This document shows positions 32,085-49,482 of a DNA stretch of 64,000 bases, in pieces. Below the pieces are notes generated by a model, which saw nothing but the letters and a program-made list of their open reading frames with translations, ran no database searches and was not told the DNA's origin. Made by a program: the position numbers and the translations under genes. The stretch covers positions 62,001 to 126,000 of IMG/VR virus record IMGVR_UViG_3300010938_000950; one strand, given 5' to 3'. How positions within the stretch are numbered: position 1 is the first letter of the stretch; every line of letters starts with the position of its first letter.

Positions 32085-34028
32085 TTAAGCTCCACTCGCA
32101 AGGAAATTGTATGGCAGTATTGCCCCATCCCATGGAAGACATATACCATTAACTAAGTGAATAAATTCACCACTATTGCCAATTAAGAAAAATGATGGCA
32201 ATCCTCCAAACGTAAGCCTAAATGGTCGCATTTTAGCTCTGGCAAATGAAAATTGTCCAGCAGTTGATGAAACTGACATTATGGCTTCTCCAGTCACAAC
32301 CTGTGCCAAACTTTTTTGAAATCCTAGTAATGAGTTTAAATTAAAACCCACAGTGTACGTAGGGCCTACAGTGGCATTAGCAGTATCACCAACTAAATTT
32401 CTACTAAGTAATTGGTGTGACCTGGTTATTCCATCAAACCCTGTCATTCCAAACGATGTACAAAAAGAATCAGTTCCAGTGCTGTTATTAAGAGCATTAC
32501 CTCCTACTAAAACTGCTATTAAATTTGGATCCTGAGTTTGTGAATATAATCTTAGAGGTGTGGTGGCCATAAAATAAAGTGCTGATGAACTATTTGTAGG
32601 AGATTTAACATGGGCAAAAATAAAATCAGTATCTGCAACTATAGATACAAACCCATTTGCACTAGCAGTTGTACCTGTAATACTACCAGTTCCGTTTGTT
32701 CTTTCGGTCATTGTGGCATTTGATCCAGAACCGGAAAATGCACTTCCATTCCAGCTACCATTTGGAGATCCAACTACTCCGAATAATCCGAAAGCATTTG
32801 CTGCACCTCTAAGTATAAATTGGAATTGTGATGGTACTGCACCAGGATTTATATTAGGGGCGCCAGTAAATGTACCAATAAAATAATTACCATTTGCTAT
32901 CGACAGTTGTGAAGCTGCCGTAACATCAATTACACGATAACTGAGAGAGGCTCTAGCAGTTAAATTATTCTTCAAAGTAGAGATATCAGTAGTTCCTCCA
33001 CTGAATGGTACAATCTTTACCTGGTCACTAGATGGTACTGCAATAATTCTATAAATGGAATCATCAGTACTAGGAGGATTAGTTGAAACTGATCCATTAG
33101 GCGATAGAGTGCCGGTTCCACCAGTGCAACCAGTAAATATCTGCCCAGTAACAGAATTGCCAGTTGTTAAAGTACCAGAACCACCTGAACATCCAGTAAA
33201 GCTCGTAGCTGTAATACCCGTATAAGTAACTATTTGTTGTACGTTTGAAGAGGTAGTGACATTAATAGTTCCAGATGTTGGGAAGCCTGTTGTAGAAGCT
33301 ACGTTGATAGTTGCTTGTGGCAATACTTGTCCGTTCGATGCGGCAGAAATTACGGTATTAATTATTCCAGTATAGTTAACAGTTTGTAGTCCACTACTGC
33401 TTAATATAAACAAAGTTCCGCTACTAGGAAATCCTACGGTAGATTGTACAGATATAGTGGCTTGTGGTAATGTCAAACCTGCGGATGCTGGGGCAATTCC
33501 ACTTCTAGGTCCAGCCAACCAAACAACTACGTGTTTTCCAATCATAGATTGAGAAAATGGTTGTGAAGAGGCGGCAGTTAGTGAGTCTCCAATTGCAGAA
33601 GTTACTCCATCATTTCCAACAGCAAGTACGGACGAGCCCTCAAAAAATCCAGTCGGACCACTTGTGGGTGATATTGGTATTCCACCGGGGACAGTGACTT
33701 GTCCACCACTCACATAGTTGGCGTTTCCTGTAGCGCCATTTAGAGCAAATTGTGTAGAATTAACAACAGTAACATTCCATCCACCATTAGCGGCGGTATT
33801 GCCCTGAACACCGTAGACTCCAACTAACTGGTTATTAGATAGTCCATGTGGAGTAGAGGTGGTAATTACGATCGGATTAGCATTGGATGCAGCCGTAACT
33901 GTAAGTATCGGTCTAGTACCATTTACACAATAGGACCAGAACTCGTAGCACAATTTCATAAAAATAGGTACATCCCTACCATTTGTGCCAGTTGTATATT
34001 GTAATCCTCTGAGAAATTTGATGGCCAT
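32085..34028 (-). CDS. Virion-type scaffold Y protein carrying 1 B and 2 nested A modules
   Basis: FLRGL.Y, YEFW.YCVNG, EG..VLA.GNDG, DSIY shared with 38606. Confidence 0.75.
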   Translation of the reverse strand: MAIKFLRGLQYTTGTNGRDVPIFMKLCYEFWSYCVNGTRPILTVTAASNANPIVITTSTPHGLSNNQLVGVYGVQGNTAANGGWNVTVVNSTQFALNGATGNANYVSGGQVTVPGGIPISPTSGPTGFFEGSSVLAVGNDGVTSAIGDSLTAASSQPFSQSMIGKHVVVWLAGPRSGIAPASAGLTLPQATISVQSTVGFPSSGTLFILSSSGLQTVNYTGIINTVISAASNGQVLPQATINVASTTGFPTSGTINVTTSSNVQQIVTYTGITATSFTGCSGGSGTLTTGNSVTGQIFTGCTGGTGTLSPNGSVSTNPPSTDDSIYRIIAVPSSDQVKIVPFSGGTTDISTLKNNLTARASLSYRVIDVTAASQLSIANGNYFIGTFTGAPNINPGAVPSQFQFILRGAANAFGLFGVVGSPNGSWNGSAFSGSGSNATMTERTNGTGSITGTTASANGFVSIVADTDFIFAHVKSPTNSSSALYFMATTPLRLYSQTQDPNLIAVLVGGNALNNSTGTDSFCTSFGMTGFDGITRSHQLLSRNLVGDTANATVGPTYTVGFNLNSLLGFQKSLAQVVTGEAIMSVSSTAGQFSFARAKMRPFRLTFGGLPSFFLIGNSGEFIHLVNGICLPWDGAILPYNFLASGA

Positions 34029-34035
34029 ATTTTCC

Positions 34036-36315
34036 TTAAGGTACTAGTGGGGGCCCGCCCCAAAAAATATACATTCCCCTTCGCATATGCTGAAAAGAAC
34101 GATTAGTATCGTGTGTTAACGTATATTCTCCAAAATTAGTTCTTCCTTCCCTTATATGCGGAATAGTTCCTATAAATCTTGCTTCTGTATTTGGAAAACC
34201 TACCCCACCTCCCCAATCGTTAACAGTGCCCCCTATCACATCTACAGATAATAATTCAGTTGCTCCTAACCAAGGATTATCTCCTGCGCTTCCATCAAAC
34301 ATAGGACTTCCGCCTTGCCCTACTCCGGAAACATACGTTAATAGAGATACTCCCGCTGATATTGGAACAGGGGTGGTAGTATTTTCATTTGCTTGCATAC
34401 TAACACCCTGGGAACGATTATTAATAGTAGTTGAAGTACCAAAAAGCCAACTACCATCATTTAAACTATTACCACTGCTTGATCCTAATCCACTTCCTAT
34501 ACAGTATAGTCGCGCTTCGTTATTCGCTGGAATTAGTGGCGGCTCAACTTCTGGCATACCAAATGATACATAAAATGATTTGGGATCGGTTGCATTTCCT
34601 GGCCTACGCCCAAACATTGTAACACCTAATCCATATCCATCATCTCCAATTATAGTATGTCTATATGAAATTGATGTTAGTGTACTAGTGTCTCCGCAAC
34701 CGGGAGCGCCACCAATATAAATGCTACTGTTACTATTATAATATAGTGGCGTATGTAAATGTCTACCAGCTACTGGAAAATCTCCGGCCGCATCACCACC
34801 AAATCCTGGTATGAAGGTAATTGGTGCACAGTTGCTTTGATCTGTATTTGTTTCATTGCAAATTCTAACCTGCCATCCAGTAGAGTTTGGGCTTTGTAAA
34901 ATTACACGTGGTGTAGTAGAATTACCATTGCCCCTGTACGACCCCGAAGGACTACTATTTACTGCTCCATTAGCTGGGGCATTAGCATCGCTGGCATATA
35001 AATACCAATTCATACTATCTGTAGGCTCAATTGGCGGCAAACTTGGAGAGTAGAAAACAGCTCCGCCAGTACTCATAACACCAGTACCGCCTGTACATCC
35101 TGTAAATGTAGTTGCCGTAATTCCAGTATATGATACTTGCTGTACGCCTGCTGCTGTGGTTACGAAGACAGTTCCAGATGGTGCAAATCCGGCACGGACA
35201 GCACCGCCAGTGGTCATTAATCCAGTACCGCCCGTACATCCTGTAAATGTAGTTGCGGTAGTTCCTGTATATGATACTGTTTGAGTGCCAGTGCTAGTGG
35301 TAACAAAAATAATACCAGTAGTAGGAAATCCAGTAGTTGAAACTACGTTAATAGTGCCTTGTGGTAATCTAACGTTATTGGATCCTGAAGCAATAGTTGT
35401 ACTTGCTGTATTTGTAGAAGCCACGTTAATGGTGGCCTGAGGTAAAGATTGTCCGTTAGAACCGGCGGCAATTGTGGTAGCTACTCCTGCTACAACCTGT
35501 GAACCACCAAGTATACTTCCGCTGCCTCCTGTACATCCTGTAAATGAGGTTGCAGTTGTACCGGTATAATTAACTGTTTGCCTGCCTGCTGGAGAGCATA
35601 TAAATATAGTTCCGCTCGTAGCAAATCCAGTAGTAGAAGTGACGTTAAGTGTAGCTGTAGGTAATGAGATACTAGCTATAACAGAGTTACCAGTAGACAT
35701 AGTGCCAGTACCTCCAGTACAACCTGTAAAAGTAGAGCCTGTAGTACCAGTATATGTAACTGTTTGTGTTCCAGCATTTGTAGCAACTAAAATGGTTCCA
35801 GATGTTGGGAAACCAGAAGTCGAGGCTACGTTAATGGTTCCTGTTGGTAAGGAAACGTTATTGGAAGCAGCGGCAATTGTGGTTGTACCACTAAGAAATG
35901 TACCAGTTCTATAGTTTATACGATAAGAGTTTGTGCTTGTATCATATCCATCAATAAGAAAACAACCAGAATTATATTGTGGATTAGTTGTGCTTCTTAA
36001 AACTAATAATCTGCCAACATCAACTTGACTAACTACTCTAGTGGCGACTGGAATAGAAACAAAGAACTCTTTTCCTGAACTTAAATTAATGCCAGCCCTA
36101 GTTCCTGCTGCGAAAGTTGGTGTGGCGGCTGTAGGAGTAGAGTCCGCTGTTGAAATTAATAAAGTACCAACTGAATTAATATTAAAATTAGTATCACCTA
36201 CATAAGTGTAAAGCAAAACTCTACGCAAAAAAATAGCCATTAAATAGGAAGGTATCCATTTCCTATTTGTACTAGTATCTTGTATTACGTAGTCTCTGAG
36301 TAAATGTCTTGCCAT
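34036..36315 (-). CDS. Virion-type scaffold X protein carrying 4 A modules (one nested)
   Basis: Close paralog of 36836 outside the inserts. Confidence 0.75.
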   Translation of the reverse strand: MARHLLRDYVIQDTSTNRKWIPSYLMAIFLRRVLLYTYVGDTNFNINSVGTLLISTADSTPTAATPTFAAGTRAGINLSSGKEFFVSIPVATRVVSQVDVGRLLVLRSTTNPQYNSGCFLIDGYDTSTNSYRINYRTGTFLSGTTTIAAASNNVSLPTGTINVASTSGFPTSGTILVATNAGTQTVTYTGTTGSTFTGCTGGTGTMSTGNSVIASISLPTATLNVTSTTGFATSGTIFICSPAGRQTVNYTGTTATSFTGCTGGSGSILGGSQVVAGVATTIAAGSNGQSLPQATINVASTNTASTTIASGSNNVRLPQGTINVVSTTGFPTTGIIFVTTSTGTQTVSYTGTTATTFTGCTGGTGLMTTGGAVRAGFAPSGTVFVTTAAGVQQVSYTGITATTFTGCTGGTGVMSTGGAVFYSPSLPPIEPTDSMNWYLYASDANAPANGAVNSSPSGSYRGNGNSTTPRVILQSPNSTGWQVRICNETNTDQSNCAPITFIPGFGGDAAGDFPVAGRHLHTPLYYNSNSSIYIGGAPGCGDTSTLTSISYRHTIIGDDGYGLGVTMFGRRPGNATDPKSFYVSFGMPEVEPPLIPANNEARLYCIGSGLGSSSGNSLNDGSWLFGTSTTINNRSQGVSMQANENTTTPVPISAGVSLLTYVSGVGQGGSPMFDGSAGDNPWLGATELLSVDVIGGTVNDWGGGVGFPNTEARFIGTIPHIREGRTNFGEYTLTHDTNRSFQHMRRGMYIFWGGPPLVP

Positions 36316-36323
36316 ATTTTACC

Positions 36324-36839
36324 TTATTGAATCCATCGTCCAACTATTTTAATATCTATTAATGGATTTCCAGATGGTGGAGTGTAGAAAATTCCTAAAT
36401 CTACATTTGGTGGGCTGCTGTTTGGGTTAATCGGCAAGCTACCAGGAGTATTAAATAATTCTGGTCGTGGCACTATATTTTCTGCAATTACCCAAGTTTC
36501 ATACGAACTAGTATTTGGGTTGTATCCGGATACTTTATAGTAGATAGTTTGATCCTTAGGATGTGTCAAAATGGGGTTATTATCTACTTGTATAGATTGT
36601 GGCGCCAGAATTGGCCTGGTATCAAAATTAGTAGTAATTCCATTGTATACTTGATCTCCGGCAGATCCTATAATGTTGTTTACATTGACGGCATCATAGT
36701 TGCTAGCTAAACCACCATAATCTTGCAAAGATGATCCTCTCGCCAGATCAAAATCGGCACTGGCAAAAGTATTGGCTTGTCCACCAAAATTTTCACTAGA
36801 TCCAAAGTTGGTAATTGTTAAATCAAAAGCATAGCTCAT
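36324..36839 (-). CDS. Structural-cluster protein Z2 with YYK..Y..W module
   Basis: YYKVSGYNPNTSSYETW...PPSGNPLIDIKIVGRW; start moved to ATG 36839 (ATGA overlap). Confidence 0.7.
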   Translation of the reverse strand: MSYAFDLTITNFGSSENFGGQANTFASADFDLARGSSLQDYGGLASNYDAVNVNNIIGSAGDQVYNGITTNFDTRPILAPQSIQVDNNPILTHPKDQTIYYKVSGYNPNTSSYETWVIAENIVPRPELFNTPGSLPINPNSSPPNVDLGIFYTPPSGNPLIDIKIVGRWIQ

Positions 36840-38596
36840 GGTATTGTTTGTGGTCCATTCCAAGTAACGTAAACTCCTCGCTTTAAATGCATCCAACTAT
36901 GGTTGGCTTCGGTTGTTATCGAGAAGTTTCCAAAGTTTGATCTTCCTGCTCTTAAATGTGGTATTGTTCCTAGTATTCTGGGTTCTAGTGGCATTGAAGC
37001 TTCAATGCCTGCATTTCCATTCCAAGTGTTAAATGTACCAGCTATTAAATCTACAGAGAATAATTCTGTACTTAAACTCCATGGACTATCTGCTGCACTA
37101 CCATCAAATATTGGACTTCCAAATTGTCCAACACCGGATACATAAGTCCATAGGGACGGTGCACAACTACAAATAATTCCTCCTTGAGTTTGTGTTACTC
37201 CTTGCAGAAACGGGTTATGATTTGCATCACCAAAGCTACCAGCATAAATAATTCCAGGAGTCCAGGTAATATCATTTAGATTATCACCAAATCCGTTATT
37301 TCCTCCCGTGCTAAGACTGCTGCCTAGAACAAATAATCTTGCTACATTATTAACTGGTAATGGCAGTGGTTCATTTTCTGCTAAACCGAATGACGCAATA
37401 TAATTTTTTGGTCTTCCAGCATTGGATGGGTCTCGCCAGAAGCGGCTAAAAATAACTACACCCTGCCCAGTGTCGTCTCCAACTAGTGTTATTCTAAATT
37501 GCATCTGTTGATATTGTGATGGACTGTATGGAATACCGAATGATCCGGAATCGTCCCCAAATCCAGGAGCCATTCCTACATATTTAGTGGTGTTATTTGT
37601 GTTGTACCATAATGGACCATGCAGGTGCGGGCCTGCAACAGCAAAATCACCTGCTGAATTGCCGCCAAATCCTGGTATAGCTGTGATTAAAGGAACATTT
37701 CCATAATTACCATTGGTTTGAATATTTTGACTATAATCAGCAAAAGTCTCATGGCATAATCTTACTTGCCAACCCAATGAGTGTGGACTTTGTAAAATTA
37801 TACGCGGTGTAGTGGAGTTACCATAACCGCCATATGTACCATTGTTAACGCCCACCCAAGTACTATTTGGCGCACCTGATGTTGGAGTTAAAGTTTCAGC
37901 AGCATATAGATACCAGTTCATGCTATCGTATGGTTCAACAGGTGGATATCCCGTAGCCCCCATTGTTCTGTAGTCAATTATGTAACAGTTTGTTACTACA
38001 GTTCCTCCGCCAGCATATGCTCCATTACCCGTTGTTCCATTGAGCGTAAATTGCGTATTATTTAATACAGTAATGGTAAAAGTTCCATTAGCATTCGTGT
38101 TTCCAGTAACTCCCGAAATAGTTACTGTTTGTCCTGTAGTTAGGGCATGTGGTGCTGTAGTTGTTACCTGTATCGGGGAAACAGCATTGCCTGAGGTGGT
38201 AGACACACTATAGTTAAGCGCTTCAAAACCAGTAATTAAAAATATACCAGAATTGAATGTAGAGTTGGCTGTACTTCTTAATACCAGCAACCTGCCTACG
38301 TCAGAAAAACTAACAGTCCTTACTGAAGGAGGAACCCATACATAAAATTCTCTTCCGGTACCTTGATTAATACCAGCTTTAGTACCCACTGCGAAAGTTG
38401 GAGATCCTGTAGGCGTAGAGTCTGGAGTAGCAATTAACAAAGTTCCTACAGCGTTGATAGGATAGTTTGTATCACCAACATAACTATACAAAAGTATTCT
38501 TCTTAAAAAGATACTCATGAGATAGCCTGGTACCCACTGCCTACTAGCCGTAGTGATATTTTGAGTAACATAATCTCTAACTGTGTGTATAGCCAT
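36836..38596 (-). CDS. Virion-type scaffold X protein carrying 1 B module
   Basis: Paralog of 34036 and 29547. Confidence 0.75.
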   Translation of the reverse strand: MAIHTVRDYVTQNITTASRQWVPGYLMSIFLRRILLYSYVGDTNYPINAVGTLLIATPDSTPTGSPTFAVGTKAGINQGTGREFYVWVPPSVRTVSFSDVGRLLVLRSTANSTFNSGIFLITGFEALNYSVSTTSGNAVSPIQVTTTAPHALTTGQTVTISGVTGNTNANGTFTITVLNNTQFTLNGTTGNGAYAGGGTVVTNCYIIDYRTMGATGYPPVEPYDSMNWYLYAAETLTPTSGAPNSTWVGVNNGTYGGYGNSTTPRIILQSPHSLGWQVRLCHETFADYSQNIQTNGNYGNVPLITAIPGFGGNSAGDFAVAGPHLHGPLWYNTNNTTKYVGMAPGFGDDSGSFGIPYSPSQYQQMQFRITLVGDDTGQGVVIFSRFWRDPSNAGRPKNYIASFGLAENEPLPLPVNNVARLFVLGSSLSTGGNNGFGDNLNDITWTPGIIYAGSFGDANHNPFLQGVTQTQGGIICSCAPSLWTYVSGVGQFGSPIFDGSAADSPWSLSTELFSVDLIAGTFNTWNGNAGIEASMPLEPRILGTIPHLRAGRSNFGNFSITTEANHSWMHLKRGVYVTWNGPQTIP

Positions 38597-38605
38597 ATCG
38601 ATTCC

Positions 38606-41600
38606 TTATATAATGTAGAACAAGCTAGATGGAAGTATTGTATTATCCCAAATAATGGCAATACCATTTTGAGTATTTAAGAATTGGCCAGTTGCTGTAC
38701 CAAATCTGTGATAGAGTGGCAAGGTAGTTCCTGTAAACTTTAATGTTCTTAATTTAACTCTACCCAAAGAATATTGTCCGGTTACTCCTGGTAGTGATAA
38801 TACACCATCTGAAGCTAGTACTGTACCTCTTGTAGTATTAAATGTTAATCTAATATCAGTTAAGTTAGACCCAAATGTTGGAGTACCATCTCCGCCTAGT
38901 GACTTAGCAAGCATTCTATAAGTTCTTATGGTGCCAGTTGTATCTTTCATAACGAATCCATTACCGATAGTTCCGCTGTTACCGCTAGTTCCGTCGCATC
39001 TAAATACTGAACCGTTAAATACTCCACCTCTACTTAATACTGCCACAGGATTTGTATCAGCGGCTTGAGTATAAAGTCTTATTGGAATTTCACAATGTAG
39101 ATACGAGGATGCATCACCACTGTTTACATCTTTGAAATGCATCCAGAAAAATGCAGGATCGGCAGCCATAGTCATAGCCATAGTGTTTGCTGGAATACCG
39201 TTGAAAATACCTCCACTTTGACTAGTAAACTGTGTTGTAGCATCTGTTTGAGGATCTCCTGTTACTGGGAAAGTAAGTCCATTCCAGTTGCCGCCTGGTG
39301 ATATAATGGTTCCAATAGTACCCGCAGTATCGTTGCCAAATAACTGTATTTGACTATTGGCTTGCCCTGGATTTATTCCAATGGATGAAGGATTGAACTG
39401 CATAACCATATAGTTACCGTTACCGCTACTGAATGTTTGAGCAAGACCAGCATCTACTATTCTGTAATTAATATTACTTCTTTGAGTAAATGACGGGTGC
39501 AAATTAGTTGGGTCTGGTGTTCCGCCAGTATTCAAATTAATTCTGATAGAATTTGGACTATTTACGGCTGTAATTATGTAAATACTATCTTCTGTAGTTC
39601 CAGAATTTGGCTTCCACATAATCAATAGCTTACCTACCATATTGCTAGTTGTAACAGTTTGAGTGCCGCCACTTGTCCATGAGCCGTTTGGAGTAGAGTT
39701 GTTTAATATAATACTATTACGATTGGCAATTGAGCCACCGCTGGTATAAGCACCACTAGCAATTGTACCATTTAGTGTTGCAACTCTATTACTAATTACT
39801 GTTGTTAATGCTGTAGTGTTAGCGTTTGGTAAACCATTAATACCAGATGTTATTACAGTTTGTCCAGTTAATAGTGTATGGAAATCAGATGTAGTAATGG
39901 TAATTGGTGACAGTATAGTATTACCAGTAGTCATAGCTCCGGTACCGCCAGAACATCCTGTAAATGTTGTGGCAGTAGTTCCTGTGTAGGATACAATTTG
40001 GTTTCCGGTACTGGTCATAATTGTAAATGAACCAGTTTGTGCAAAACTAATAAACACAGGATTACCTGTAGTCATAGTTCCGGTGCCGCCAGAACATCCT
40101 GTAAAAGAAGTGCCCGTGGTACCAGTATACGTTACAGGTTGATATCCGGTAGTTGTTAATACATATATGTAACCGCTAGTTGGGAAACCTGTAGTTGAAG
40201 CTACGTTAATAGTAGCTTGTGGCAGTACTTGTCCACTGGATGCGACTGCAATTGAAGTGTAATTGCTAGCTGGAGAGAAGGCTGTGAACACCGATCCGCC
40301 AGCAGAAGTGCTTCCCGTACCACCTGAGCATCCAGTTAGTGATGTGGCACTTACGCCAGTATAATTTATTAGTTGAGAACCGGCTGAGGTAGTAATGTAC
40401 AATGAACCGGCAGTTGGAAAATTAGTAAAAAATCCAGTGTTATTTACTGTGTTGCCAGTAAACATAGTTCCGAATCCGCCCAATGCACCAGTGAAGGAAG
40501 TGCCGGTTACACCAGTATAGGTAACTGTTTGATTGAATGGTCCGCCGCCAATTGGAATACCAATCAACAGAGTACCAGTTCCGCCCGTACATCCTGTAAA
40601 TGAAGTTGAAGTTAGTCCCGTATAAGAAACCGAAGTGGCCGCATAAACAACACCACCAGTTGACATGGTTCCACCACCACCAGAACATCCAGTGAAGGAA
40701 GTTCCTGTGGTACCCGTGTATGTGACTATCTGTGCACCAGAGCTTGTTGTTACATAAATAGTTCCAGAAGCCGCAAATCCTACTGTCGAGGCTACGTTAA
40801 TAGTGCCTTGTGGTAATGCCTGTCCGTTGGAGCCGGCAGCGATAGTTGTTTGAATAGAGTTGTCTGCTACACTGAGAGTTCCGCTAGTTGGAAATCCATT
40901 AGTAGTAGATACATTAATAGTTGATTGAGGTAATGATTGACCACTAGATCCTAGTGCAATACTAGTTACTACTGTAGTGGCAATATTTAATGTACCTGTC
41001 GTTGGAAATCCGGTAGTTGAAACTACGTTAATCGTACCGGTTGGCAATGCGATATTGTTAGATCCTGATGCAATGGTCGTACTTGCCGTTGCTGTGGCGG
41101 CTACGTTGATTGTAGCTGTTGGTAATGCTTGAATGCCAGTAGTGGTTGTGAAAGGTGCAGCAGTATTTGCATTAACAGTTGCCTGTGGCAAAGATGCTCC
41201 ATTCGATGGAAAACCAGTTGTGGTATTAAAGTATGTTGCATTGGAAATATTGTTAGTTGGGGTGGTAATTATCCAAGTTCCATTGGCAGTTGTATTTCCA
41301 GTGACGCCACTTACTACAACAGATCCTAAATTAGAATAAGAGTTCGCGGCCGTCATATTAACTGATATTGGTGCAGTTACTGCCCCACCAGTTGACATAG
41401 TGCCAGTACCACCAGAGCAACCAGTAAAGGTTGTTCCTGTAATACCGGTATAAGTAACTGTTTGTACACCACCGCTAGTCGTAACGTTAATTGTTCCACT
41501 GCTTGGGAATCCGATGGTGACAGTACCACCAGTTTGCATGGAACCACGTCCTAGAGTACATCCAGTAAAAGTAGTGGCCGTAATACCTGTGTACAGCACT

Positions 41601-42373
41601 TGTTGGATGCCTTCAGTAGTTTGTACATTTAAATATCCACCAGAAGGAAAACCAGTAGTGGATGCTACGTTGATAGTACCAGTAGGTAGTGAAACGTTGT
41701 TAGAAGAGGCTGCGATGGTTGTGCTAGCGGTTGTAGTAGAAGCAACGTTTATGGTAGCCTGAGGTAAAGATTGTCCGTTAGATCCCGCAGCAATAGTAGT
41801 TCTGTAATTAGAAACATTGTTAATTGTAAAGCTAGTAGCGGCACTTGTAAATGGATTGACATTGGTTGCACTGAAAACAGCATCCCCACTGACAGACGTA
41901 CTAACCTGAGCAGCAGTGTATCCATCATTTCCGATTGCTAAAACAGGGGTTCCTTCTGTAAAATTAACTGGCCATGCGAATGGGGTAGTATTAATGACAC
42001 CGCCGCCAGTATACGATCCATTTCCAGTTGATCCGTTTAAGCTAAATGTGGTTGTAGAAGTAACTGTAATTTGAAAAGTTCCGTTAGCGGCCAAATTTCC
42101 TAATACTCCAGAAATTGTAACTTGTTGTCCAGTAAATAGTGCGTGAGTTGTTGTAGTAGTAATAACGATTGGAGATACGCCAGCGCCTGTGGTATTTGAT
42201 ACGTTGTATGAAATGCTCATGGTGTTTGCAAATCCACCAGGCGTTTGCAAGCCGGTTCCACCATTAACGCAGTATCCCCAGAACTCATAGAGTACTTTTA
42301 AGAACTCGGAGGCTCTTCCAGTTTGGTTATAATTGTAAAATAGTCCTCGACAGAACCTTAGTGAAGTTGGCAT
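38606..42373 (-). CDS. Virion-type scaffold Y protein with a ~730-aa nested insert (8 A and 3 B modules in total)
   Basis: Paralog of 32085; see findings. Confidence 0.75.
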   Translation of the reverse strand: MPTSLRFCRGLFYNYNQTGRASEFLKVLYEFWGYCVNGGTGLQTPGGFANTMSISYNVSNTTGAGVSPIVITTTTTHALFTGQQVTISGVLGNLAANGTFQITVTSTTTFSLNGSTGNGSYTGGGVINTTPFAWPVNFTEGTPVLAIGNDGYTAAQVSTSVSGDAVFSATNVNPFTSAATSFTINNVSNYRTTIAAGSNGQSLPQATINVASTTTASTTIAASSNNVSLPTGTINVASTTGFPSGGYLNVQTTEGIQQVLYTGITATTFTGCTLGRGSMQTGGTVTIGFPSSGTINVTTSGGVQTVTYTGITGTTFTGCSGGTGTMSTGGAVTAPISVNMTAANSYSNLGSVVVSGVTGNTTANGTWIITTPTNNISNATYFNTTTGFPSNGASLPQATVNANTAAPFTTTTGIQALPTATINVAATATASTTIASGSNNIALPTGTINVVSTTGFPTTGTLNIATTVVTSIALGSSGQSLPQSTINVSTTNGFPTSGTLSVADNSIQTTIAAGSNGQALPQGTINVASTVGFAASGTIYVTTSSGAQIVTYTGTTGTSFTGCSGGGGTMSTGGVVYAATSVSYTGLTSTSFTGCTGGTGTLLIGIPIGGGPFNQTVTYTGVTGTSFTGALGGFGTMFTGNTVNNTGFFTNFPTAGSLYITTSAGSQLINYTGVSATSLTGCSGGTGSTSAGGSVFTAFSPASNYTSIAVASSGQVLPQATINVASTTGFPTSGYIYVLTTTGYQPVTYTGTTGTSFTGCSGGTGTMTTGNPVFISFAQTGSFTIMTSTGNQIVSYTGTTATTFTGCSGGTGAMTTGNTILSPITITTSDFHTLLTGQTVITSGINGLPNANTTALTTVISNRVATLNGTIASGAYTSGGSIANRNSIILNNSTPNGSWTSGGTQTVTTSNMVGKLLIMWKPNSGTTEDSIYIITAVNSPNSIRINLNTGGTPDPTNLHPSFTQRSNINYRIVDAGLAQTFSSGNGNYMVMQFNPSSIGINPGQANSQIQLFGNDTAGTIGTIISPGGNWNGLTFPVTGDPQTDATTQFTSQSGGIFNGIPANTMAMTMAADPAFFWMHFKDVNSGDASSYLHCEIPIRLYTQAADTNPVAVLSRGGVFNGSVFRCDGTSGNSGTIGNGFVMKDTTGTIRTYRMLAKSLGGDGTPTFGSNLTDIRLTFNTTRGTVLASDGVLSLPGVTGQYSLGRVKLRTLKFTGTTLPLYHRFGTATGQFLNTQNGIAIIWDNTILPSSLFYII

Positions 42374-42412: not shown

Positions 42413-43372
42413 TTATGCGAACCAAGTGTCTAAGACCTCTGGAGTAGAATAAGGCCCTATACACGGGAAAGCTGGCGCATTTGCTAAAGAAATTTCTGTG
42501 TCTACCCAAACAACCGGAGTAGGAGTTGTACAGGAAGTATCATAAGCTCTTAATTTATAATATCTCACGGCGCTGGTAACTGTGATTGGTAAAACCCCAA
42601 CTTTGTACACTAATTTAAAATAATCCAGAGGTCTTGCAATATCCGCGACTCTAATATCTTGAATTAAAATATTTGGTTCTTCTTTATTGGCTGATCCTGT
42701 AGCTGTAATTGCACCAGTTCTCCAAAATCCAAAACCATTAACACCGTCGGTATACGATAAGGATGCTGCTGCTACAGAATTTAATTGTGTACTTCCAGAA
42801 TATCTAATACATTGAAATCCATTTAAATAGGCACGCAAATCTGTGCCATCGTGTGTTAATCCTATATGCGACCACTGCTGCAGGGGTATCGGAAAATCGG
42901 TAACTGTGAATGTAGCATTGGTACTCGAAGTTAAAGCAACTTGTGCTATCCAGTCTTGGCCACCGTTAGATGTAAGTGTAGAAATATTAATAGCTTGAAA
43001 GGGGCTCGTCCAACTTGAAGTAATTGTACTATCTCTATATTCTTTTCCAAATAATGTTGTATTATTTGTAGTAGTATAAGATTTTAAATATACCCAAGCC
43101 GACACAGTTAATGGCGGCGTAGGATTAATAGTTTTAGCGCCAGCCGCGTAATTTCTAGTGGCTGAGGCGCCGGTCGGAAAATTTCCTGTGCTAGGAAACT
43201 GCGCACAAGAGTCATCAAAAACGCCAGTTCCAGTCCTTACTATGGTATTAGTAATATTTAAATCTGTACTTACATCATTAGGTGAAGTGACGCCGGTATT
43301 TCTATACGGACCAGAACTTTCGTTAAGTCTCCACACTAAAATATCATGTTCGTCTGGTGTTACTCTACCCAT
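42413..43372 (-). CDS. LamG/concanavalin-A-like domain protein with C-terminal YYKLRAYDT module
   Basis: TVSAWVY, WSHIGLTHDG..LRAYLNG, IQDIRV. Confidence 0.8.
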   Translation of the reverse strand: MGRVTPDEHDILVWRLNESSGPYRNTGVTSPNDVSTDLNITNTIVRTGTGVFDDSCAQFPSTGNFPTGASATRNYAAGAKTINPTPPLTVSAWVYLKSYTTTNNTTLFGKEYRDSTITSSWTSPFQAINISTLTSNGGQDWIAQVALTSSTNATFTVTDFPIPLQQWSHIGLTHDGTDLRAYLNGFQCIRYSGSTQLNSVAAASLSYTDGVNGFGFWRTGAITATGSANKEEPNILIQDIRVADIARPLDYFKLVYKVGVLPITVTSAVRYYKLRAYDTSCTTPTPVVWVDTEISLANAPAFPCIGPYSTPEVLDTWFA

Positions 43373-43374
43373 GA

Positions 43375-44316
43375 TTAAAATCCTAACTTAGTCCAAGATT
43401 GCACTATTTCTATCGGCCCCAAACTACCACCACATGGAGGAGATGGTGCACCGTTGTAGTTTATTCCATTAGATACCCAATAAACTGGAGGAGAATTTGA
43501 ACAAGTTGTATCATATGCTCTTAATTTATAATATTGAGATAGTGGATTTGAACCTGTACCTGGGGATAACACTCCGTTTCTGTATACATTTTGAAAATAT
43601 GATTGTGGTCTAGCTACATTAGCAATTCTAATATCACATATTGAACATACTGGTTCTTCTGGATTTCCTGAGCCGGCTGGTATGGCACCTACGAACCATG
43701 GACCTGGAGTAGTGCCGTAGTTTATATTTCCGCTAGCTGTACCTGTAGCGACTATACTTCCATTAATATAGCCTATCTGAGTGGCACCATCATATGTTAG
43801 TCCAACATGTGTCCAATTATATAAAGAAATTGTGTTTTCAGCAGATACCGTACCTGCACCGCCAGATGCCGTAACAAAAAATAAGTCCCAGGCTGACGAT
43901 TGTGAGGTATATGTTCTATTTTGTAATCCCAATGCTCCAAATGTACTAGACCAGTTTCCGGTATTCATTTGTTTCATGAACGGATGCTGTGTAAATCCTG
44001 TAGTATTGTAGGCTCGCAAATAAATCCAAAAAGATATGGTAATAGGGGCTTGTAGCGTAAAATTATTAGCACCAGCAATAAAATTGCGAGGGCTGCTGCT
44101 ATTAGATCCTGTGAACTGTACACAACTGTTATTACCAGATGCAGCAAATAGACTCGGCTGTTGTAATAAGACTGTTCCTGATAACGTAGCTAAATCAGAA
44201 ACGGCATGTGAAGGGGCTGATGGAGAAGTAGAAGAATTTACAAACGGAGCTGCCGCTTCGTCTAATTTCCACACAACAAGATCATTATTATCTGGTTCTA
44301 TTCTAGTTCCTGACAT
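43375..44316 (-). CDS. LamG/concanavalin-A-like domain protein with C-terminal YYKLRAYDT module
   Basis: TISFWIY, WTHVGLTYDG...YING, ICDIRI. Confidence 0.8.
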   Translation of the reverse strand: MSGTRIEPDNNDLVVWKLDEAAAPFVNSSTSPSAPSHAVSDLATLSGTVLLQQPSLFAASGNNSCVQFTGSNSSSPRNFIAGANNFTLQAPITISFWIYLRAYNTTGFTQHPFMKQMNTGNWSSTFGALGLQNRTYTSQSSAWDLFFVTASGGAGTVSAENTISLYNWTHVGLTYDGATQIGYINGSIVATGTASGNINYGTTPGPWFVGAIPAGSGNPEEPVCSICDIRIANVARPQSYFQNVYRNGVLSPGTGSNPLSQYYKLRAYDTTCSNSPPVYWVSNGINYNGAPSPPCGGSLGPIEIVQSWTKLGF

Positions 44317-45038
44317 TATGGCACCGTTCCACCAAAGTATGCTTCAGCAAAATATGATTGAGGTCTTACTATATTTGCGAGTCTAACATCTTGCACAATT
44401 AAATTTCCACCATCTAATGAAGCGGTATCTGGAATAGTACCTACAAACCATTTACCAGGATTTCCACTATTACTTACAGCGCCACCACCTGGAACTAAAC
44501 TTCCAACTAATGTACCATTCAAATAAGCTCTCAGAGTGGTGCCGTCCCATGTTTCTCCTACATGAACCCACCTGCCTTGTGGTATTAAATAAGGAGAATT
44601 AATGGCTAACTCTCTTAGTGTACCACCCGTTGTTACGTAGGCTATCCATCTACCATCCGATGTGTTTCTAATATATAATCCACATGTGAGGAAGGGTGAA
44701 GACCATGATCCTGCTGAGTATTGTTTAGTAAAAATGGATCCGTAGCTGCTGGAATATCTTCTAACAAATACCCAAGCTGAAAGAGAGAAGTTAGCAGGTA
44801 CATCAACTCCAAATCCACCACCACTGCCATCATGATTTGAAGAGATATTTTGACCAGGAATATAAACTCCTTTGAAATCTGCGTCTATTTTGATGAGACC
44901 TGGAACTTCCGAAATTATACCACCATAATCCACCAGATCACCAGCAGAACCAGCAGTTCCTAAATTTTGACGATTTGGACCCGCTTCATTTAGTGGATAG
45001 ACTAAGATATCATTTGCATCTGGTTGTAATCTAGCCAT
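44316..45038 (-). CDS. LamG/concanavalin-A-like domain protein
   Basis: SLSAWVF, WVHVGETWDGTTLRAYLNG, VQDVRL. Confidence 0.8.
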   Translation of the reverse strand: MARLQPDANDILVYPLNEAGPNRQNLGTAGSAGDLVDYGGIISEVPGLIKIDADFKGVYIPGQNISSNHDGSGGGFGVDVPANFSLSAWVFVRRYSSSYGSIFTKQYSAGSWSSPFLTCGLYIRNTSDGRWIAYVTTGGTLRELAINSPYLIPQGRWVHVGETWDGTTLRAYLNGTLVGSLVPGGGAVSNSGNPGKWFVGTIPDTASLDGGNLIVQDVRLANIVRPQSYFAEAYFGGTVP

Positions 45039-46533: not shown

Positions 46534-49482
46534 ATGAGTAATTATCCCTTTAGTTTCGACAACAATATCACTCTACCTGGAGTTTCTGGAAGTTCGCAGG
46601 AAGATGTAGCTATTACTGCTCTGAGAAGTGCAGTTTTTGCTATTGAAACCGAGCTTGGAATTACTCCAAGCGGAATTTATCCCGATGTTAGAACTAGATT
46701 AGATATTTTAGAATCTAGAATTCAATTTGGAGTTTCTCCTCAAATTCCAAATGATGGTTATGTAAAAAGTCCTTTATATATTTGGAATGTCCCGCAAAAT
46801 ATAGTTTTAAGCATTAGCGATGGATATGGGGCACCTACCGAAAATAGACTAGACGGCTCTCTCTATATGAGAGGCGGGGATGGCTATGCCAATAATCAAC
46901 TTTATGTTAGACTAAATGGTCAATGGTATCCTGTACAAACTGAACAATTTACCGCAGCTAATGACTTAGCTGGGTATCCACCTGGTTCAGATGGACATTT
47001 AGCACAGACAGTTATTGGATTATATAATCATCCATTTAATACTACCATGGACACCGTGGGCGCCGTAGAAGATGGCTATCACGTTACCTGGAATAATATT
47101 TTAGGAATGTGGGAAGCTCAAACTGGATTTATTCCAGGTCGCGACCTCATGGCATTTTCTGGTCCTTACGGACGTACTGGTCAACAAGTTATTGGCCTTC
47201 AAGGTTTCCCTCTCTCAGGATTCCCTCCAACTGATGGATACACGCTAGTTTGGCAGGCGTCTGATAATCGTTGGGAACCACAAGCACGCGCTGTCATATT
47301 TGACGGGTACGTTGCTCGTGTCAACTTACGTTCCAACCGCGCTCAACAATCACCAATTTTAAACACCAAAACTGGAATTGTAAACTTTGGAACTGATACG
47401 AGCGGGCTGACTCTCGGAGCCACCAATGACTACGCTATAATTTTAGGTGGTGACCGAAATCTTTCATCTGGAATTCACTCCATCGTTGTAGGTGGTTTTG
47501 CTGGCAATTCTTCGGATGGTTACGCTCTTATTATTAATGGAAATTCCAACACAGCATCCGCCCAATATGCTACAGTTGTTAACGGAACTACCAATGCCGC
47601 TAGCGGTATACGATCATTAGTATTACACGGAACTTCCAATATAGCTTCTGGTGCTAATTCCTATATAGGTAACGGCGCTAGCAATACAACAGCGGCCAAT
47701 TTTTCTGCCGTACTAAATGGATCTTCTAATAGTATCTCTTCAGGATCTACCCATGCAGCAATCGGATTTGGTAATCTAAATCAAATAACGGGCGGCGCAG
47801 CTTCACAATTCTCTATCATCCTTGGCGGAACTACCAACGTTATTTCTAGCGCTGAAAATGTTCTCATCGGAGTTCCAGACAGTTCTGATTCAGCGGCCCC
47901 ACACTCTATTTTACTATCCGGTGTAAATAATTCAATTCTTACACTGTCTGATTACTCAGCTATTTTAACTGGCACGAATAACACAATAAATACGTCTTCA
48001 GAATATGGATTTATTGGAACTGGTCAAAATAATAATGCTACTGGCCATTTTTCTACTATCTTAAATGCAGATACTTCCACGGTAAATGGACAACACGCTA
48101 CGGTTCTAAAAGGTCTTAGTAATAGTGCAACCGGACAGCATTCCACCATTATTAATGGAAATAGTAACACCATAAATAGTGCCGGCTGGAGTATTATTCT
48201 AGATGGTTATAATAATTCTGTAACCGGCACAGGATCATTTATTGCAGATGGTTACAACAATAGTGTTTCCGGATTCTTTTCATCTATTCTGAATGGTAAT
48301 TTCAATATTATTGCGGGTAGAAATAGCACCATCATGAATGGTACTGGCAATAATATAGACACTAATAGTGCTGAAAGTGCTGTTATTTTAGGAAATAATA
48401 ATACGTTTGTCAACTCAACCAATGCACTTGTAACCGGTACTGGTAACGTACTAACAAATGCATCGCAGCAATTTGTATTGGGAGCTAATAACAGTACTCA
48501 ATCAGCCTTCTCATTTATCAATGGCAGTTTGAATACACTGGCAACGGGTTCAGCATTCAATAGAATTTTCGGTTCAAGTAATACACTGGGAGCAAATGCT
48601 TCTACCAATTTTATTATGGGCAGCTCCAATATTGTGGGACCAGCTAACGCTACATCAAATACAGTTATTTTAGGAACCAATAACCTTGTAGATAATTCTA
48701 GCGCAGCCTATGTGAGAGGATCTAGTAATATCGTAAGTTCTAATTTTGGTTTTGTAGACGGTCAGTTTGGTAAATCAAGAATGTTTGGCCAAGGAGTAAT
48801 GTCCAATTCTAGATTTACTGCAACCACAATCGCTGCCGGTTCCAATGGTCAAAGTTTACCACAAGGCACTATTAACGTAGTTTCCACGGCCGGATTCCCA
48901 TCCAGTGGATCAATAGCTGTCATTACTTCACTTGGTTTACAGTCTGTTACCTATTCTGGTACAACTGGTACCAGCTTTACAGGCTGTGCTGGCGGTAGTG
49001 GTGTTATGTCTACTGGTAATGCTGTAGGTAAGATTGGTGAAGTCCAATGGTCGCGCTTGGTATTGACTGGTAGATCAACTGGTGGAGCTGCAATTCCATT
49101 ACAATTACAAGATACAGTTGCTGCTAACCCAACCTTCGTTGATGGTTATTCTTATGATTTAAGTATCAAAGTTCTTATCGTTAATACTTCGCCAATCACA
49201 CCAAATCCAGTGGTTCCAGCAAGATATCACATAGATGTTCTTGCACATCAAGAAAGTGGTGTGTTGGTGTTGGATAATATCAATTATACATTGTCTACGC
49301 CTAACACAGTAGATAGTATATTTAGAACGCCTTGGACCGTTACGATTTCTACTAACGGCGCAAACCAAATGTTAGTAACAGTTGATGTTGAAGCGCTTAC
49401 CTCTTACGTACAACCAAGCAATACACCTTCTGATAGAAGAGCAATTGCTACAATTGAAATGCGAGAAATTTCGAGACTATAA
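46534..49482 (+). CDS. Fibre/adhesin-like protein with ~15-aa beta-solenoid repeats (YadA-head-like) and one A module
   Basis: N.A.G..S.I.NG..N repeats; N-terminus paralogous to 45046. Confidence 0.7.
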   Translation: MSNYPFSFDNNITLPGVSGSSQEDVAITALRSAVFAIETELGITPSGIYPDVRTRLDILESRIQFGVSPQIPNDGYVKSPLYIWNVPQNIVLSISDGYGAPTENRLDGSLYMRGGDGYANNQLYVRLNGQWYPVQTEQFTAANDLAGYPPGSDGHLAQTVIGLYNHPFNTTMDTVGAVEDGYHVTWNNILGMWEAQTGFIPGRDLMAFSGPYGRTGQQVIGLQGFPLSGFPPTDGYTLVWQASDNRWEPQARAVIFDGYVARVNLRSNRAQQSPILNTKTGIVNFGTDTSGLTLGATNDYAIILGGDRNLSSGIHSIVVGGFAGNSSDGYALIINGNSNTASAQYATVVNGTTNAASGIRSLVLHGTSNIASGANSYIGNGASNTTAANFSAVLNGSSNSISSGSTHAAIGFGNLNQITGGAASQFSIILGGTTNVISSAENVLIGVPDSSDSAAPHSILLSGVNNSILTLSDYSAILTGTNNTINTSSEYGFIGTGQNNNATGHFSTILNADTSTVNGQHATVLKGLSNSATGQHSTIINGNSNTINSAGWSIILDGYNNSVTGTGSFIADGYNNSVSGFFSSILNGNFNIIAGRNSTIMNGTGNNIDTNSAESAVILGNNNTFVNSTNALVTGTGNVLTNASQQFVLGANNSTQSAFSFINGSLNTLATGSAFNRIFGSSNTLGANASTNFIMGSSNIVGPANATSNTVILGTNNLVDNSSAAYVRGSSNIVSSNFGFVDGQFGKSRMFGQGVMSNSRFTATTIAAGSNGQSLPQGTINVVSTAGFPSSGSIAVITSLGLQSVTYSGTTGTSFTGCAGGSGVMSTGNAVGKIGEVQWSRLVLTGRSTGGAAIPLQLQDTVAANPTFVDGYSYDLSIKVLIVNTSPITPNPVVPARYHIDVLAHQESGVLVLDNINYTLSTPNTVDSIFRTPWTVTISTNGANQMLVTVDVEALTSYVQPSNTPSDRRAIATIEMREISRL

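What the first reader, a model, noticed from the sequence alone, without database searches (positions are those of the whole stretch)
39650..41836. Russian-doll protein: domains nested about seven levels deep
Seen: the ~730-aa insert in 38606..42373 parses as balanced brackets, not tandem repeats. B1 opens (SFTINNVSNY), holds A1[A2], resumes (APISV..ANGTWIITTP), then B2 opens (NNISNATY). Next A3 (..GASLPQATVNANT), A4 (..QALPTATINVAAT), A5 (..GFPTTGTLNIATT) and A6 (..GFPTSGTLSVADN) open, and A7 is complete (~40643-40853). The missing halves follow in exact reverse order: A6 (SVSYTGLT..GC), A5 (QTVTYTGVT..), A4 (NFPTAGSLY..GC), A3 (with A8 inside), B2 (SPITITT..H.L.TGQ..GG), B1 (NSIILN..NGSWTSGG). 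Each resumed half restarts where it was cut. Inference: the modules have adjacent N- and C-termini and insert into loops of each other, so the chain goes out and comes back, building a two-stranded or branched stalk. I know of no described phage protein with recursive insertion this deep.
Basis: partly seen in the sequence, partly recalled or inferred. Interest (0 to 1): 0.92.

Follow-up and report, generated by a model that had tools for sequence, protein, structure and literature searches.

The report
Seven-deep nested-domain phage fibre protein
A 1255-residue structural protein of an uncultivated giant phage is built from small beta-barrel domains inserted into each other's loops seven levels deep. 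That matches or exceeds the deepest nesting found in the literature searched (six levels, in a cyanobacterial RNA polymerase), and related phages differ by whole modules at the innermost positions.

Summary
ORF 38606..42373 (minus strand, 1255 aa) carries a 723-residue insert, residues 181-903. With a profile built only from contiguous copies in other genes, it parses as B1{A1[A2]}{B2{A3[A4[A5[A6[A7]]] A8]}}.

- Every N-fragment ends where its last-in-first-out partner resumes, at profile positions about 26 or about 39-43.
- All five rejoined A modules score as full-length single hits (72-115 bits, against 99-111 for contiguous copies). Non-complementary joins do not.
- A is an undescribed 72-aa beta domain. 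It has no Pfam, PHROG or PDB sequence match, occurs in about 2,900 protein clusters, and folds alone at pLDDT 97.7.
- B is an E1-FCCH-like barrel.
- Relatives without the insert read ...PFTSA-MVGK... without a break.
- Orthologues differ by exactly one or two whole modules at the innermost positions.
- The AlphaFold model of the insert (pLDDT 81) gives each split half the secondary structure of the matching part of a free module. Covariation favours nested over crossed pairing.

Coordinates of the model could not be inspected, so co-folding of the halves is inferred rather than seen. The closest precedent is the nested SBHM domains of cyanobacterial RNA polymerase SI3. I found no phage example in the searchable literature. 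Function is inferred: a single-chain branched stalk on a virion fibre or baseplate protein.

The parts
38606..42373 (-). Whole gene, 1255 aa: N-terminal family motif, B0, linker, nested insert, C-terminal domain
   Evidence: 24 orthologues at 52-86% identity
42218..42373 (-). Residues 1-52. N-terminal motif (..YEFWGYCVNG..TPGG) shared by all family members, including 429-531 aa forms without the insert
41990..42217 (-). Residues 53-128. B0, a contiguous E1-FCCH-like barrel outside the nest
   Evidence: Pfam PF16190, 40 bits against a cut-off of 29.5; own B profile 84-90 bits
41834..41989 (-). Residues 129-180. Linker ending ..NPFTSAAT, the upstream lip of the insertion point
   Evidence: relatives read PFTSA-MVGK without a break
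41804..41833 (-). Residues 181-190. B1 piece 1, the first strand (SFTINNVSNY)
   Evidence: Motif shared with B0 and B2; predicted strand; adds only 3.2 bits
41735..41803 (-). Residues 191-213. A1 N half, cut at profile position about 26
41516..41734 (-). Residues 214-286. A2, complete, inside A1
   Evidence: 99.2 bits, profile 2-72
41375..41515 (-). Residues 287-333. A1 C half, resumes at profile 25-27
   Evidence: Rejoined A1 scores 114.8 bits, profile 3-72
41258..41374 (-). Residues 334-372. B1 piece 2 (B profile 17-53)
41228..41257 (-). Residues 373-382. B2 piece 1, the first strand (TNNISNATYF)
   Evidence: Motif; predicted 8-residue strand; no score gain
41162..41227 (-). Residues 383-404. 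A3 N half (cut about 26), diverged
   Evidence: 17.4 bits alone; 74.1 bits rejoined
41093..41161 (-). Residues 405-427. A4 N half (cut about 26); the first 10 residues are diverged
   Evidence: Rejoined 71.9 bits, profile 11-71
40973..41092 (-). Residues 428-467. A5 N half (cut about 39, in the hairpin turn)
40859..40972 (-). Residues 468-505. A6 N half (cut about 39)
40643..40858 (-). Residues 506-577. A7, complete, the innermost module (level 7) and the predicted distal tip
   Evidence: 111.1 bits; folds alone at pLDDT 97.7, pTM 0.85
40547..40642 (-). Residues 578-609. A6 C half (resumes at about 44)
   Evidence: Rejoined 79.0 bits. In orthologue P0004 the innermost contiguous module matches A6 best in its first (83%) and last (76%) parts
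40442..40546 (-). Residues 610-644. A5 C half (resumes at about 43)
   Evidence: Rejoined 89.8 bits
40286..40441 (-). Residues 645-696. A4 C half (resumes at about 26), including a short linker
40052..40285 (-). Residues 697-774. Linker plus A8, complete: the second branch inside A3
   Evidence: 110.0 bits. In orthologues P0007 and P0024 it is split at site 26 by one contiguous 73-aa A module
39911..40051 (-). Residues 775-821. A3 C half (resumes at about 27)
39719..39910 (-). Residues 822-885. B2 piece 2, the barrel body
   Evidence: 55.6 bits. Foldseek to the UBA6 FCCH domain 7sol_A: rmsd 1.9 A over 67 columns, probability 1.0
39665..39718 (-). Residues 886-903. B1 piece 3 (B profile 61-76)
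38609..39664 (-). Residues 904-1255. Conserved C-terminal domain of unknown fold, starting ..SNMVGK. It is shared with the 647-aa paralogue at 32085-34028 and with many 429-662 aa proteins of related phages
   Evidence: no PDB or PHROG match

Best explanation
The gene encodes a virion-surface protein (fibre or baseplate accessory) of an uncultivated jumbo phage.

**Architecture.** A conserved two-part scaffold (N-terminal motif and C-terminal domain of about 340 aa) is interrupted between ..PFTSA and MVGK.. by a single-chain tree of ten small beta-barrel domains. Two are FCCH-like barrels (B1, B2). Eight belong to a new 72-residue family (A1-A8).

**How the nest is built.** Each domain has its first and last strands side by side, so it can sit in a surface loop of another copy. 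The chain runs outward through the N-terminal parts of B1, B2, A3, A4, A5 and A6. It makes the complete A7 at the tip and returns through the C-terminal parts in reverse order. Side branches are A1[A2] and A8. The result is a branched stalk seven domains long whose two chain ends stay at the base.

**How it evolves.** Length changes by adding or removing whole modules at the leaves, because only there is a module one contiguous in-frame piece of DNA.

**Shown and inferred.**
- Shown: the parse, the autonomy of A, the seamless un-inserted relatives and the leaf polymorphism.
- Inferred: the three-dimensional co-folding of the halves, the stalk shape, the virion location and a role in reaching or binding the host surface.
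For: **Sequence parse.** The independent profile gives complementary fragments in last-in-first-out order. All rejoined modules score as full-length hits, and wrong cut types do not.

**Module A is autonomous.** Alone it folds at pLDDT 97.7 and pTM 0.85.

**The nested model is confident.** Residues 170-925 give pLDDT 81 and pTM 0.61. Split halves have pLDDT 82-90 and the same strand pattern as the free module. Continuous strands bridge the junctions.

**Covariation.** Contacts 5/6-67 and the hairpin pairs covary. Nested pairing beats crossed pairing in 31 of 41 informative clusters.

**Family-wide regularity.** There are three loop hot spots, 82.5% complementarity against 40% in shuffles, and quantised insert lengths.

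**Natural excisions.**
- Un-inserted relatives read PFTSAMVGK.
- P0007 and P0024 carry one contiguous extra module inside A8.
- Six orthologues lack exactly one module and P0019 lacks two, all at the innermost positions.

**Structural-gene context.**
- The neighbour at 54689-55894 is 43-47% identical to cyanomyovirus 'virion structural protein' genes.
- Three ConA-like lectin genes lie adjacent, and several large proteins share modules A and B.
- The A fold resembles domains of phage tail tip, tail tube and tailspike N-termini, with TM 0.6-0.73.
Against: - No coordinates or contact map could be read, so co-folding of the halves rests on indirect readouts.
- Foldseek E-values for module A are weak (0.2-2).
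- The orthologue alignment behind the large model has only 25 sequences.
- The sequences in the covariation test are related, so its p-value is only indicative.
- One pairwise alignment (P0006 against the query) placed the extra module as two gaps, which is compatible with a crossed reading.
- The first strands of B1 and B2 are barely supported by sequence. If B2's is wrong, the depth is six.
- Virion location and function are untested. The phage is uncultivated, and no PHROG or cultured-phage match exists for the protein.
- There is no clear conservation gradient from base to tip.
Confidence: 0.78

Rival explanations
1. Crossed or swapped pairing. The same fragments fold into A-type barrels, but same-type halves pair first-in-first-out, or pair between subunits of an oligomer (3D domain swapping). 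That would give an interlocked structure rather than a simple out-and-back tree.
For: - Cut-point logic and profile scores cannot tell A5N+A5C from A5N+A6C (89.8 against 89.2 bits).
- P0006 against the query aligned with the inner first part and the outer remainder.
- From general knowledge, phage fibres are usually oligomers.
Against: - The covariation sign test favours nested pairing: 31 against 10 clusters, p=0.0015.
- The monomer model is confident, and its long strands run directly from an outer module into the next inner one.
- The extra module in P0007 and P0024 is one contiguous complete unit.
- Crossed pairing would need long loop-outs.
Confidence: 0.1
2. Not domains at all. Blocks of partial tandem duplications (first-part repeats followed by last-part repeats) form some other continuous beta structure or a partly disordered region, and the balanced counts are a by-product.
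For: - At sequence level a[abc]bc equals a,a,bc,bc, so two partial tandem duplications could write the same string.
- The first 40 positions of A resemble NHL propeller blades weakly.
Against: - Counts of the three sub-elements are equal (8/8/8) here. They stay balanced in orthologues of different depth.
- Cut points are complementary far beyond the shuffled control.
- Halves keep the exact strand pattern of the free domain at high pLDDT.
- Each NHL repeat match is about 12 bits with i-E about 1, and covers only part of A.
Confidence: 0.05
3. Assembly or gene-calling artefact. Repeats were mis-joined in a metagenomic contig.
For: The sequence comes from a metagenome and is repetitive.
Against: - DNA copies are only 60-79% identical, with no long exact repeats.
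- The ORF is intact.
- 24 orthologues from separate samples, on contigs up to about 500 kb, keep the same string. Neighbouring genes keep their order.
Confidence: 0.01

Closest known systems
SI3 insertion of cyanobacterial/chloroplast RNA polymerase beta' (eight sandwich-barrel hybrid motifs; crystal and cryo-EM structures, PMC10895346; called a six-level nest in PMC13114784)
   Same: - Homologous small beta domains are recursively inserted into one another.
- Several domains are built from distant chain segments.
- A long rod (150 A) is made from one chain, and both ends return to the host loop.
- Copy number varies between lineages.
   Different: - The fold and family differ. Foldseek of A finds no SBHM or RNA polymerase chain.
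- The host protein differs: a phage structural protein rather than the trigger loop of an enzyme.
- Here two families, A and B, are interleaved.
- The depth is 7 (5 of them A-in-A) against 6.
- Depth is polymorphic among close orthologues.
E1 ubiquitin-activating enzyme FCCH domain (Pfam PF16190)
   Same: - B0 passes the Pfam threshold.
- B2 superposes on the UBA6 and UBA1 FCCH domain at 1.9-2.3 A over about 67 columns.
- From general knowledge, FCCH in E1 is itself an inserted domain, so its termini are adjacent.
   Different: - There is no E1 context or catalytic cysteine role.
- Here the barrel serves as a host for further insertions in two of its loops.
Small beta-barrel domains of phage tail proteins (Chi tail tip 8vjh_B, Mystique tail tube 9n71_A, AP22 gp54 and LKA1 gp49 tailspike N-terminal domains) and the N-terminal barrel of F1/V1-ATPase subunits
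   Same: Module A has a similar fold: TM 0.59-0.73 and rmsd 2.5-4.2 A over about 75 columns.
   Different: - There is no sequence relationship: identity is 13-17% and E-values are 0.2-2.
- I know of none of these being described as nested in itself.
Single-level decoration or carbohydrate-binding insertions in phage tail proteins (for example 'evolved' distal tail proteins of lactococcal phages; recalled from general knowledge, not tested here)
   Same: Accessory domains are inserted into loops of a conserved structural scaffold and exposed on the virion.
   Different: Those are one level deep and heterologous. Here the insertion is recursive and mostly homotypic.

Membership tests
Nested (recursive) domain-insertion architecture, A1-B1-C-B2-A2 as defined in PMC13114784 | A domain's sequence is interrupted, and the flanking segments together make one complete copy of a family that also occurs uninterrupted | tested here: met
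   Rejoined A1, A3, A4, A5 and A6 score 72-115 bits full-length against a profile of contiguous copies from other genes. Rejoined B1 scores 42.9 bits.
Nested (recursive) domain-insertion architecture, A1-B1-C-B2-A2 as defined in PMC13114784 | The interrupting segment is itself one or more complete domains, and an inserted domain hosts a further insertion | tested here: met
   Iterative excision. Inserted lengths are quantised in module units. The chain of hosts is B1>B2>A3>A4>A5>A6>A7.
Nested (recursive) domain-insertion architecture, A1-B1-C-B2-A2 as defined in PMC13114784 | The separated segments pack together in three dimensions | tested here: inconclusive
   Model coordinates are not returned by the tools. 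Indirect support comes from identical DSSP patterns and pLDDT 82-90 in the halves, covarying cross-cut pairs, and nested pairing beating crossed pairing 31:10.
E1_FCCH (PF16190), for module B | Score above Pfam's gathering threshold | tested here: met
   B0 scores 40 bits against 29.5. Paralogues score 25-58 bits. B1 and B2 were matched only by my own profile.
E1_FCCH (PF16190), for module B | FCCH barrel fold | tested here: met
   The B2 part of the model superposes on UBA6 7sol_A: rmsd 1.9 A, 67 columns, probability 1.0.
Sandwich-barrel hybrid motif (SBHM) / RNA polymerase SI3 | SBHM fold or sequence relationship of the nested module | tested here: not met
   No RNA polymerase or SBHM chain appears among the Foldseek matches of module A, nor among PDB sequence matches. 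The resemblance is in architecture only.
Tandem-repeat or circularly permuted repeat protein | Head-to-tail succession of whole or permuted units | tested here: not met
   The order of profile fragments is N N N N F C C C F C. Same-type N fragments are adjacent, which no tandem or permuted reading allows.
NHL-repeat beta-propeller | Significant match of the unit to NHL blades, and a propeller fold | tested here: not met
   Each blade match is about 12 bits with i-E about 1, and covers only positions 5-41. There is no Pfam NHL hit. A folds as a closed 72-aa domain.
Phage tail fibre / receptor-binding protein | Presence in the virion, oligomeric fibre, host binding | not testable with these tools
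   Only context is available: neighbouring virion-structural homologue, lectin-like genes and fold similarity to tail domains. There is no PHROG or cultured-phage match for the protein itself.

The most novel reading that the evidence does not exclude
Module A is a previously undescribed self-nesting beta-barrel family, found in about 2,900 protein clusters, almost all without annotation. It would give large phages a general way to grow single-chain, branched, length-adjustable stalks by adding or dropping leaf modules. This protein would be the deepest natural domain nest so far recorded, at seven levels. Its depth polymorphism among orthologues would be a record of insertion events in progress.
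Probability: 0.5. Interest if true: 0.82.

Novelty: new variant of a known kind. Interest (0 to 1): 0.72.

Why it matters
**Rarity.** Recursive domain insertion is rare. A 2026 survey of 2.7 million classified domains highlights a six-level nest in cyanobacterial RNA polymerase as its example of greatest complexity (PMC13114784). This protein is a second, independent and slightly deeper case, in a different fold and in a virus.

**A tractable system for how nests arise.**
- The same module occurs free, in tandem and nested at three defined loops.
- It occurs in many paralogues.
- Close orthologues differ by single leaf modules.

**What it offers other fields.**
- For protein folding and design, it is a natural example of a 720-residue rod in which most domains can only complete folding after everything inside them has been made.
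- For phage biology, it suggests a way to tune the reach of a surface appendage without moving either chain end.
- For annotation, it adds a module family absent from Pfam and PHROGs. Ordinary domain annotators would report it as fragments.

Tried and rejected
- **Protein-family and structure libraries.** Pfam, PHROGs, PDB sequence searches and tblastn against 50,697 phage records with the whole protein gave only E1_FCCH for module B. Pfam on 11 separate A modules gave nothing.
- **NHL resemblance.** A profile-against-PDB search gave a weak, repeat-summed match of A positions 5-41 to NHL 'Pizza' propellers and PknD. I judged it non-significant per unit and inconsistent with the 72-aa closed fold.
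- **Foldseek of the 756-residue model.** Against PDB it found only the FCCH barrel. Against BFVD it gave low-TM matches (0.05-0.14) to large cyanophage and uncultured-phage structural proteins, which say nothing about the nest.
- **Contact check.** I looked for model coordinates in the data folder to compute contacts. None are provided, so the direct co-folding check could not be made.
- **Automatic rejoining.** It stalled at A3 because of diverged linkers and was completed with hand-set boundaries.
- **Permutation test.** On this protein alone it is only moderately strong (1.7-3.3%). The family-wide statistics carry the weight.
- **Module-by-module orthology.** Percent identity is noisy because all A copies resemble each other.
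- **Conservation gradient.** Per-module conservation shows no base-to-tip gradient.
- **C-terminal domain.** A profile of it has no PDB or PHROG match.
- **Mobile DNA element.** I considered one that carries the module. No terminal repeats or recent copies were seen. This was not pursued further.


Full report
**1. What is there**

The finding lies in one intact ORF, window 38606..42373 on the minus strand, 1255 aa. Pfam recognises only an E1_FCCH barrel at residues 71-128. PHROGs, the PDB sequences and 50,697 deposited phage genomes give nothing else. By eye the middle of the protein is made of two kinds of unit:
- A: about 72 aa, with a first part ..IAAGSNGQxLPQxTINVAST, a middle part GFPxSGTIxVTTxxG, and a last part QxVTYTGxTxTxFTGCxGGTGxMxTGxxV.
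- B: the FCCH-like barrel.

**2. Checking the bracket structure**

To avoid circularity I built the A profile only from eight contiguous copies found in five other genes of the window. Its hits on the focal protein carry these profile coordinates:

| Residues | Profile positions |
|---|---|
| 191-215 | 3-27 |
| 216-286 | full |
| 286-333 | 25-72 |
| 383-414 | starts at 3 |
| 415-429 | 13-27 |
| 430-467 | 2-39 |
| 469-505 | 3-39 |
| 507-576 | full |
| 581-605 | 44-68 |
| 615-643 | 43-71 |
| 650-695 | 26-71 |
| 705-773 | full |
| 776-820 | 27-71 |

. Each opened module is closed at the point where it was cut, in reverse order.

Iterative excision of full hits and rejoining then produced full-length hits made of two distant segments:
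- A1: 101.5 bits
- A6: 71.6 bits
- A5: 78.5 bits
- A4: 48.7 bits

With hand-set boundaries all five split modules score 72-115 bits over essentially the whole profile. The three contiguous copies score 99-111. Joining an N half cut at 26 to a C half starting at 43, or the reverse, never gives a full-length hit.

A B profile from four paralogues gives 42.9 bits for the three rejoined pieces of B1, whose main pieces cover profile 17-53 and 61-76, and 55.7 bits for B2. The short first strands of B1 and B2 add almost no score. Three things support them:
- the shared N-x-S-N motif seen in B0, B1 and B2;
- the fact that contiguous B copies all begin with such a strand;
- the predicted strands.

The architecture is therefore B1{A1[A2]}{B2{A3[A4[A5[A6[A7]]] A8]}}. 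That is eight A and two B modules, seven of them discontinuous, with a longest chain of seven levels. If the first strand of B2 were wrongly assigned the depth would be six.

**3. More than chance, and not an artefact**
- Random orders of the 13 fragments form a valid nesting in 1.7% of trials, which is modest on its own.
- Across 212 non-identical related proteins there are 467 contiguous and 194 split A modules.
- Cut points cluster at profile positions 26-27, 38-43 and 50-56.
- The length enclosed between halves is quantised at about 1, 2, 3, 4 and 5 module lengths.
- 82.5% of pairs are complementary within six positions. Shuffled partners give 40% +/- 3%.
- At the DNA level the copies are 60-79% identical with no long exact repeats.
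- 24 orthologues from other metagenomes, on contigs up to about 500 kb, keep the pattern. Mis-assembly is therefore excluded for practical purposes.

**4. Natural excision experiments**

The protein family has a common N-terminal motif (..YEFWGYCVNG..TPGG) and a common C-terminal domain of about 340 aa. Short members of 429-531 aa exist in related phages.
- One short member (L007 5284-6840) reads ..QPFTSAMVGKTL.. at the place where the focal protein has ..PFTSAAT, then 723 residues, then ..SNMVGK...
- The 647-aa paralogue in the window shares both ends (40% and 32% identity). It carries only a one-deep A[A] nest, at a third site near position 53.
- Among orthologues, P0007 and P0024 have one contiguous, complete 73-aa A module inserted into the query's uninterrupted A8, exactly after ..INVAST.
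- Six orthologues are shorter by 70-71 residues within the A6/A7 region.
- P0019 is shorter by two modules (144 residues).
- In P0004 the innermost contiguous module resembles the query's split A6 most closely in its first part (83%) and its last part (76%).

All differences are at leaves of the tree. Only there is a module one contiguous stretch of DNA.

**5. Structure**

- Module A7 with an alignment of 71 diverse contiguous modules folds at pLDDT 97.7 and pTM 0.85. It is an autonomous domain.
- Residues 170-925, with 24 orthologues as the alignment, give pLDDT 81 and pTM 0.61. The split halves are at 82-90, like the contiguous modules.
- Strand for strand, the DSSP string of each rejoined pair reproduces that of the free module.
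- At the hairpin-turn insertions, long unbroken strands run from the outer module into the first strand of the inner one, and from the inner module's last strand back into the outer one. These are protein residues 460-472, 498-511, 575-584 and 607-619. That is what a two-stranded connector between stacked barrels would look like.
- Mutual information over 259 contiguous modules picks out the hairpin pairs 33-44, 35-42, 37-42 and 38-43, which straddle the site-39 cut. It also picks out pairs 5-67 and 6-67, which put the first and last strands in contact.
- Using the strongest cross-cut pairs, nested pairing of halves scores better than crossed pairing in 31 of 41 informative sequence clusters (sign test p=0.0015). 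The clusters are related, so this is supportive rather than conclusive.

Foldseek results:
- The B2 part of the model matches the FCCH barrel of UBA6 and UBA1 at about 2 A.
- Module A gives weak E-values but TM 0.6-0.73 to small barrels in phage tail tip, tail tube and tailspike N-terminal domains, and to the N-terminal barrel of F1/V1 ATPases.

**6. Context and likely role**

The window comes from a very large phage. It carries tubulin/TubZ-like, ribonucleotide reductase, DnaB, UvsW-like, PIN-PhoH and GMP-reductase-like genes, and relatives sit on 340-510 kb contigs.

The gene sits in a block of large genes that share A and B modules (845, 647, 759, 586, 982 and 1564 aa). Three ConA-like lectin genes are next to it. 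Also in the block is a homologue (43-47% identity) of a cyanomyovirus 'virion structural protein'. Order is conserved in related contigs.

I therefore read the protein as a virion appendage whose nested insert forms a single-chain branched stalk projecting from the conserved scaffold. This last step is inference. Per-module conservation shows no obvious hypervariable tip, and the C-terminal domain has no known relatives.

**7. How general**

A profile search of 1.84 billion representative proteins finds A in 2,905 clusters (1,171 at E<=1e-10). The focal orthologue group is the top hit, with 15 matched stretches. Many other proteins have one-deep nests at the same three loops. One unrelated 1304-aa protein (P0121) has nests three to about five deep at the third loop. 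Self-nesting is therefore a property of the module family, not of this gene alone.

**8. Comparison with what is known**

Recursive insertion of homologous small beta domains has one well-studied precedent, the SI3 insertion of cyanobacterial RNA polymerase beta'. It has eight SBHM domains, four of them built from distant segments, forming a 150 A rod (PMC10895346). A 2026 survey of 2.7 million domains calls it a six-level nest (PMC13114784). The present case works the same way but is not a member of that family, because module A shows no SBHM relationship. Four literature searches for nested or recursive insertion in phage proteins returned nothing relevant.

**9. Verdict**

The remaining gap is a direct look at the contacts between halves. 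I class it as a new variant of a known kind: recursive domain insertion, here in a new module family, in a virus, at equal or greater depth, and polymorphic among orthologues.

Noticed in passing
window 32085-34028 (-), 647 aa: Short paralogue of the focal protein, with the same N-terminal motif, B module and C-terminal domain. It carries a one-deep A[A] nest at a third insertion site (profile about 50-53) that the focal protein does not use.
   Followed up: partly
window 34036-36315 (-), 759 aa: Two contiguous A modules followed by a one-deep nest at site 25/26. Residues 275-420 are 73% identical to A1[A2] of the focal protein, which suggests the nested pair was copied as a unit.
   Followed up: partly
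window 42413-45038 (-): Three adjacent paralogous genes (319, 313 and 240 aa), each with a ConA-like lectin/glucanase (Laminin_G_3) domain and weak matches to PHROG virion-structural families. They lie immediately upstream of the focal gene.
   Followed up: no
window 4997-6355 (+): Tubulin/FtsZ-family GTPase with a TubZ-like C-terminal domain, as in the PhuZ-type tubulins of some jumbo phages.
   Followed up: no
window 46534-49482 (+), 982 aa: Large protein with one contiguous A module (residues about 764-832). It also has a borderline match to the grass antifreeze beta-roll family: 30.4 bits against a cut-off of 30.
   Followed up: no
window 36324-36896 and 36836-38596 (-): A 190-aa ORF with a TTG start overlaps the end of the 586-aa B-module gene by 61 nt in another frame. 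It is unclear whether it is a real gene, a frameshifted continuation or noise.
   Followed up: no
window 17873-19186 (+), 14946-17450 (+), 58366-59409 (-): Auxiliary genes typical of very large phages: a PIN-PhoH fusion, a ribonucleotide reductase large subunit with a TSCPD domain, and an IMPDH/GMP-reductase family enzyme.
   Followed up: no
P0121 (1304 aa), residues 107-462 and 909-1111: Another protein family with deep A-in-A nests, this time at the third loop (profile about 51-57). One block parses cleanly three deep and another about four to five deep.
   Followed up: partly
module A, profile positions 5-41: Weak, repeat-summed sequence resemblance to NHL propeller blades (designer 'Pizza' proteins and PknD). 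Each repeat scores about 12 bits. It is probably convergent beta-strand composition.
   Followed up: partly
L007, L051/L052, L006 (related viral contigs): Related phages carry three or more paralogues with the same N-terminal motif and C-terminal domain, and zero to two A modules (429-582 aa). This is a multigene family of appendage proteins differing mainly in the inserted modules.
   Followed up: partly
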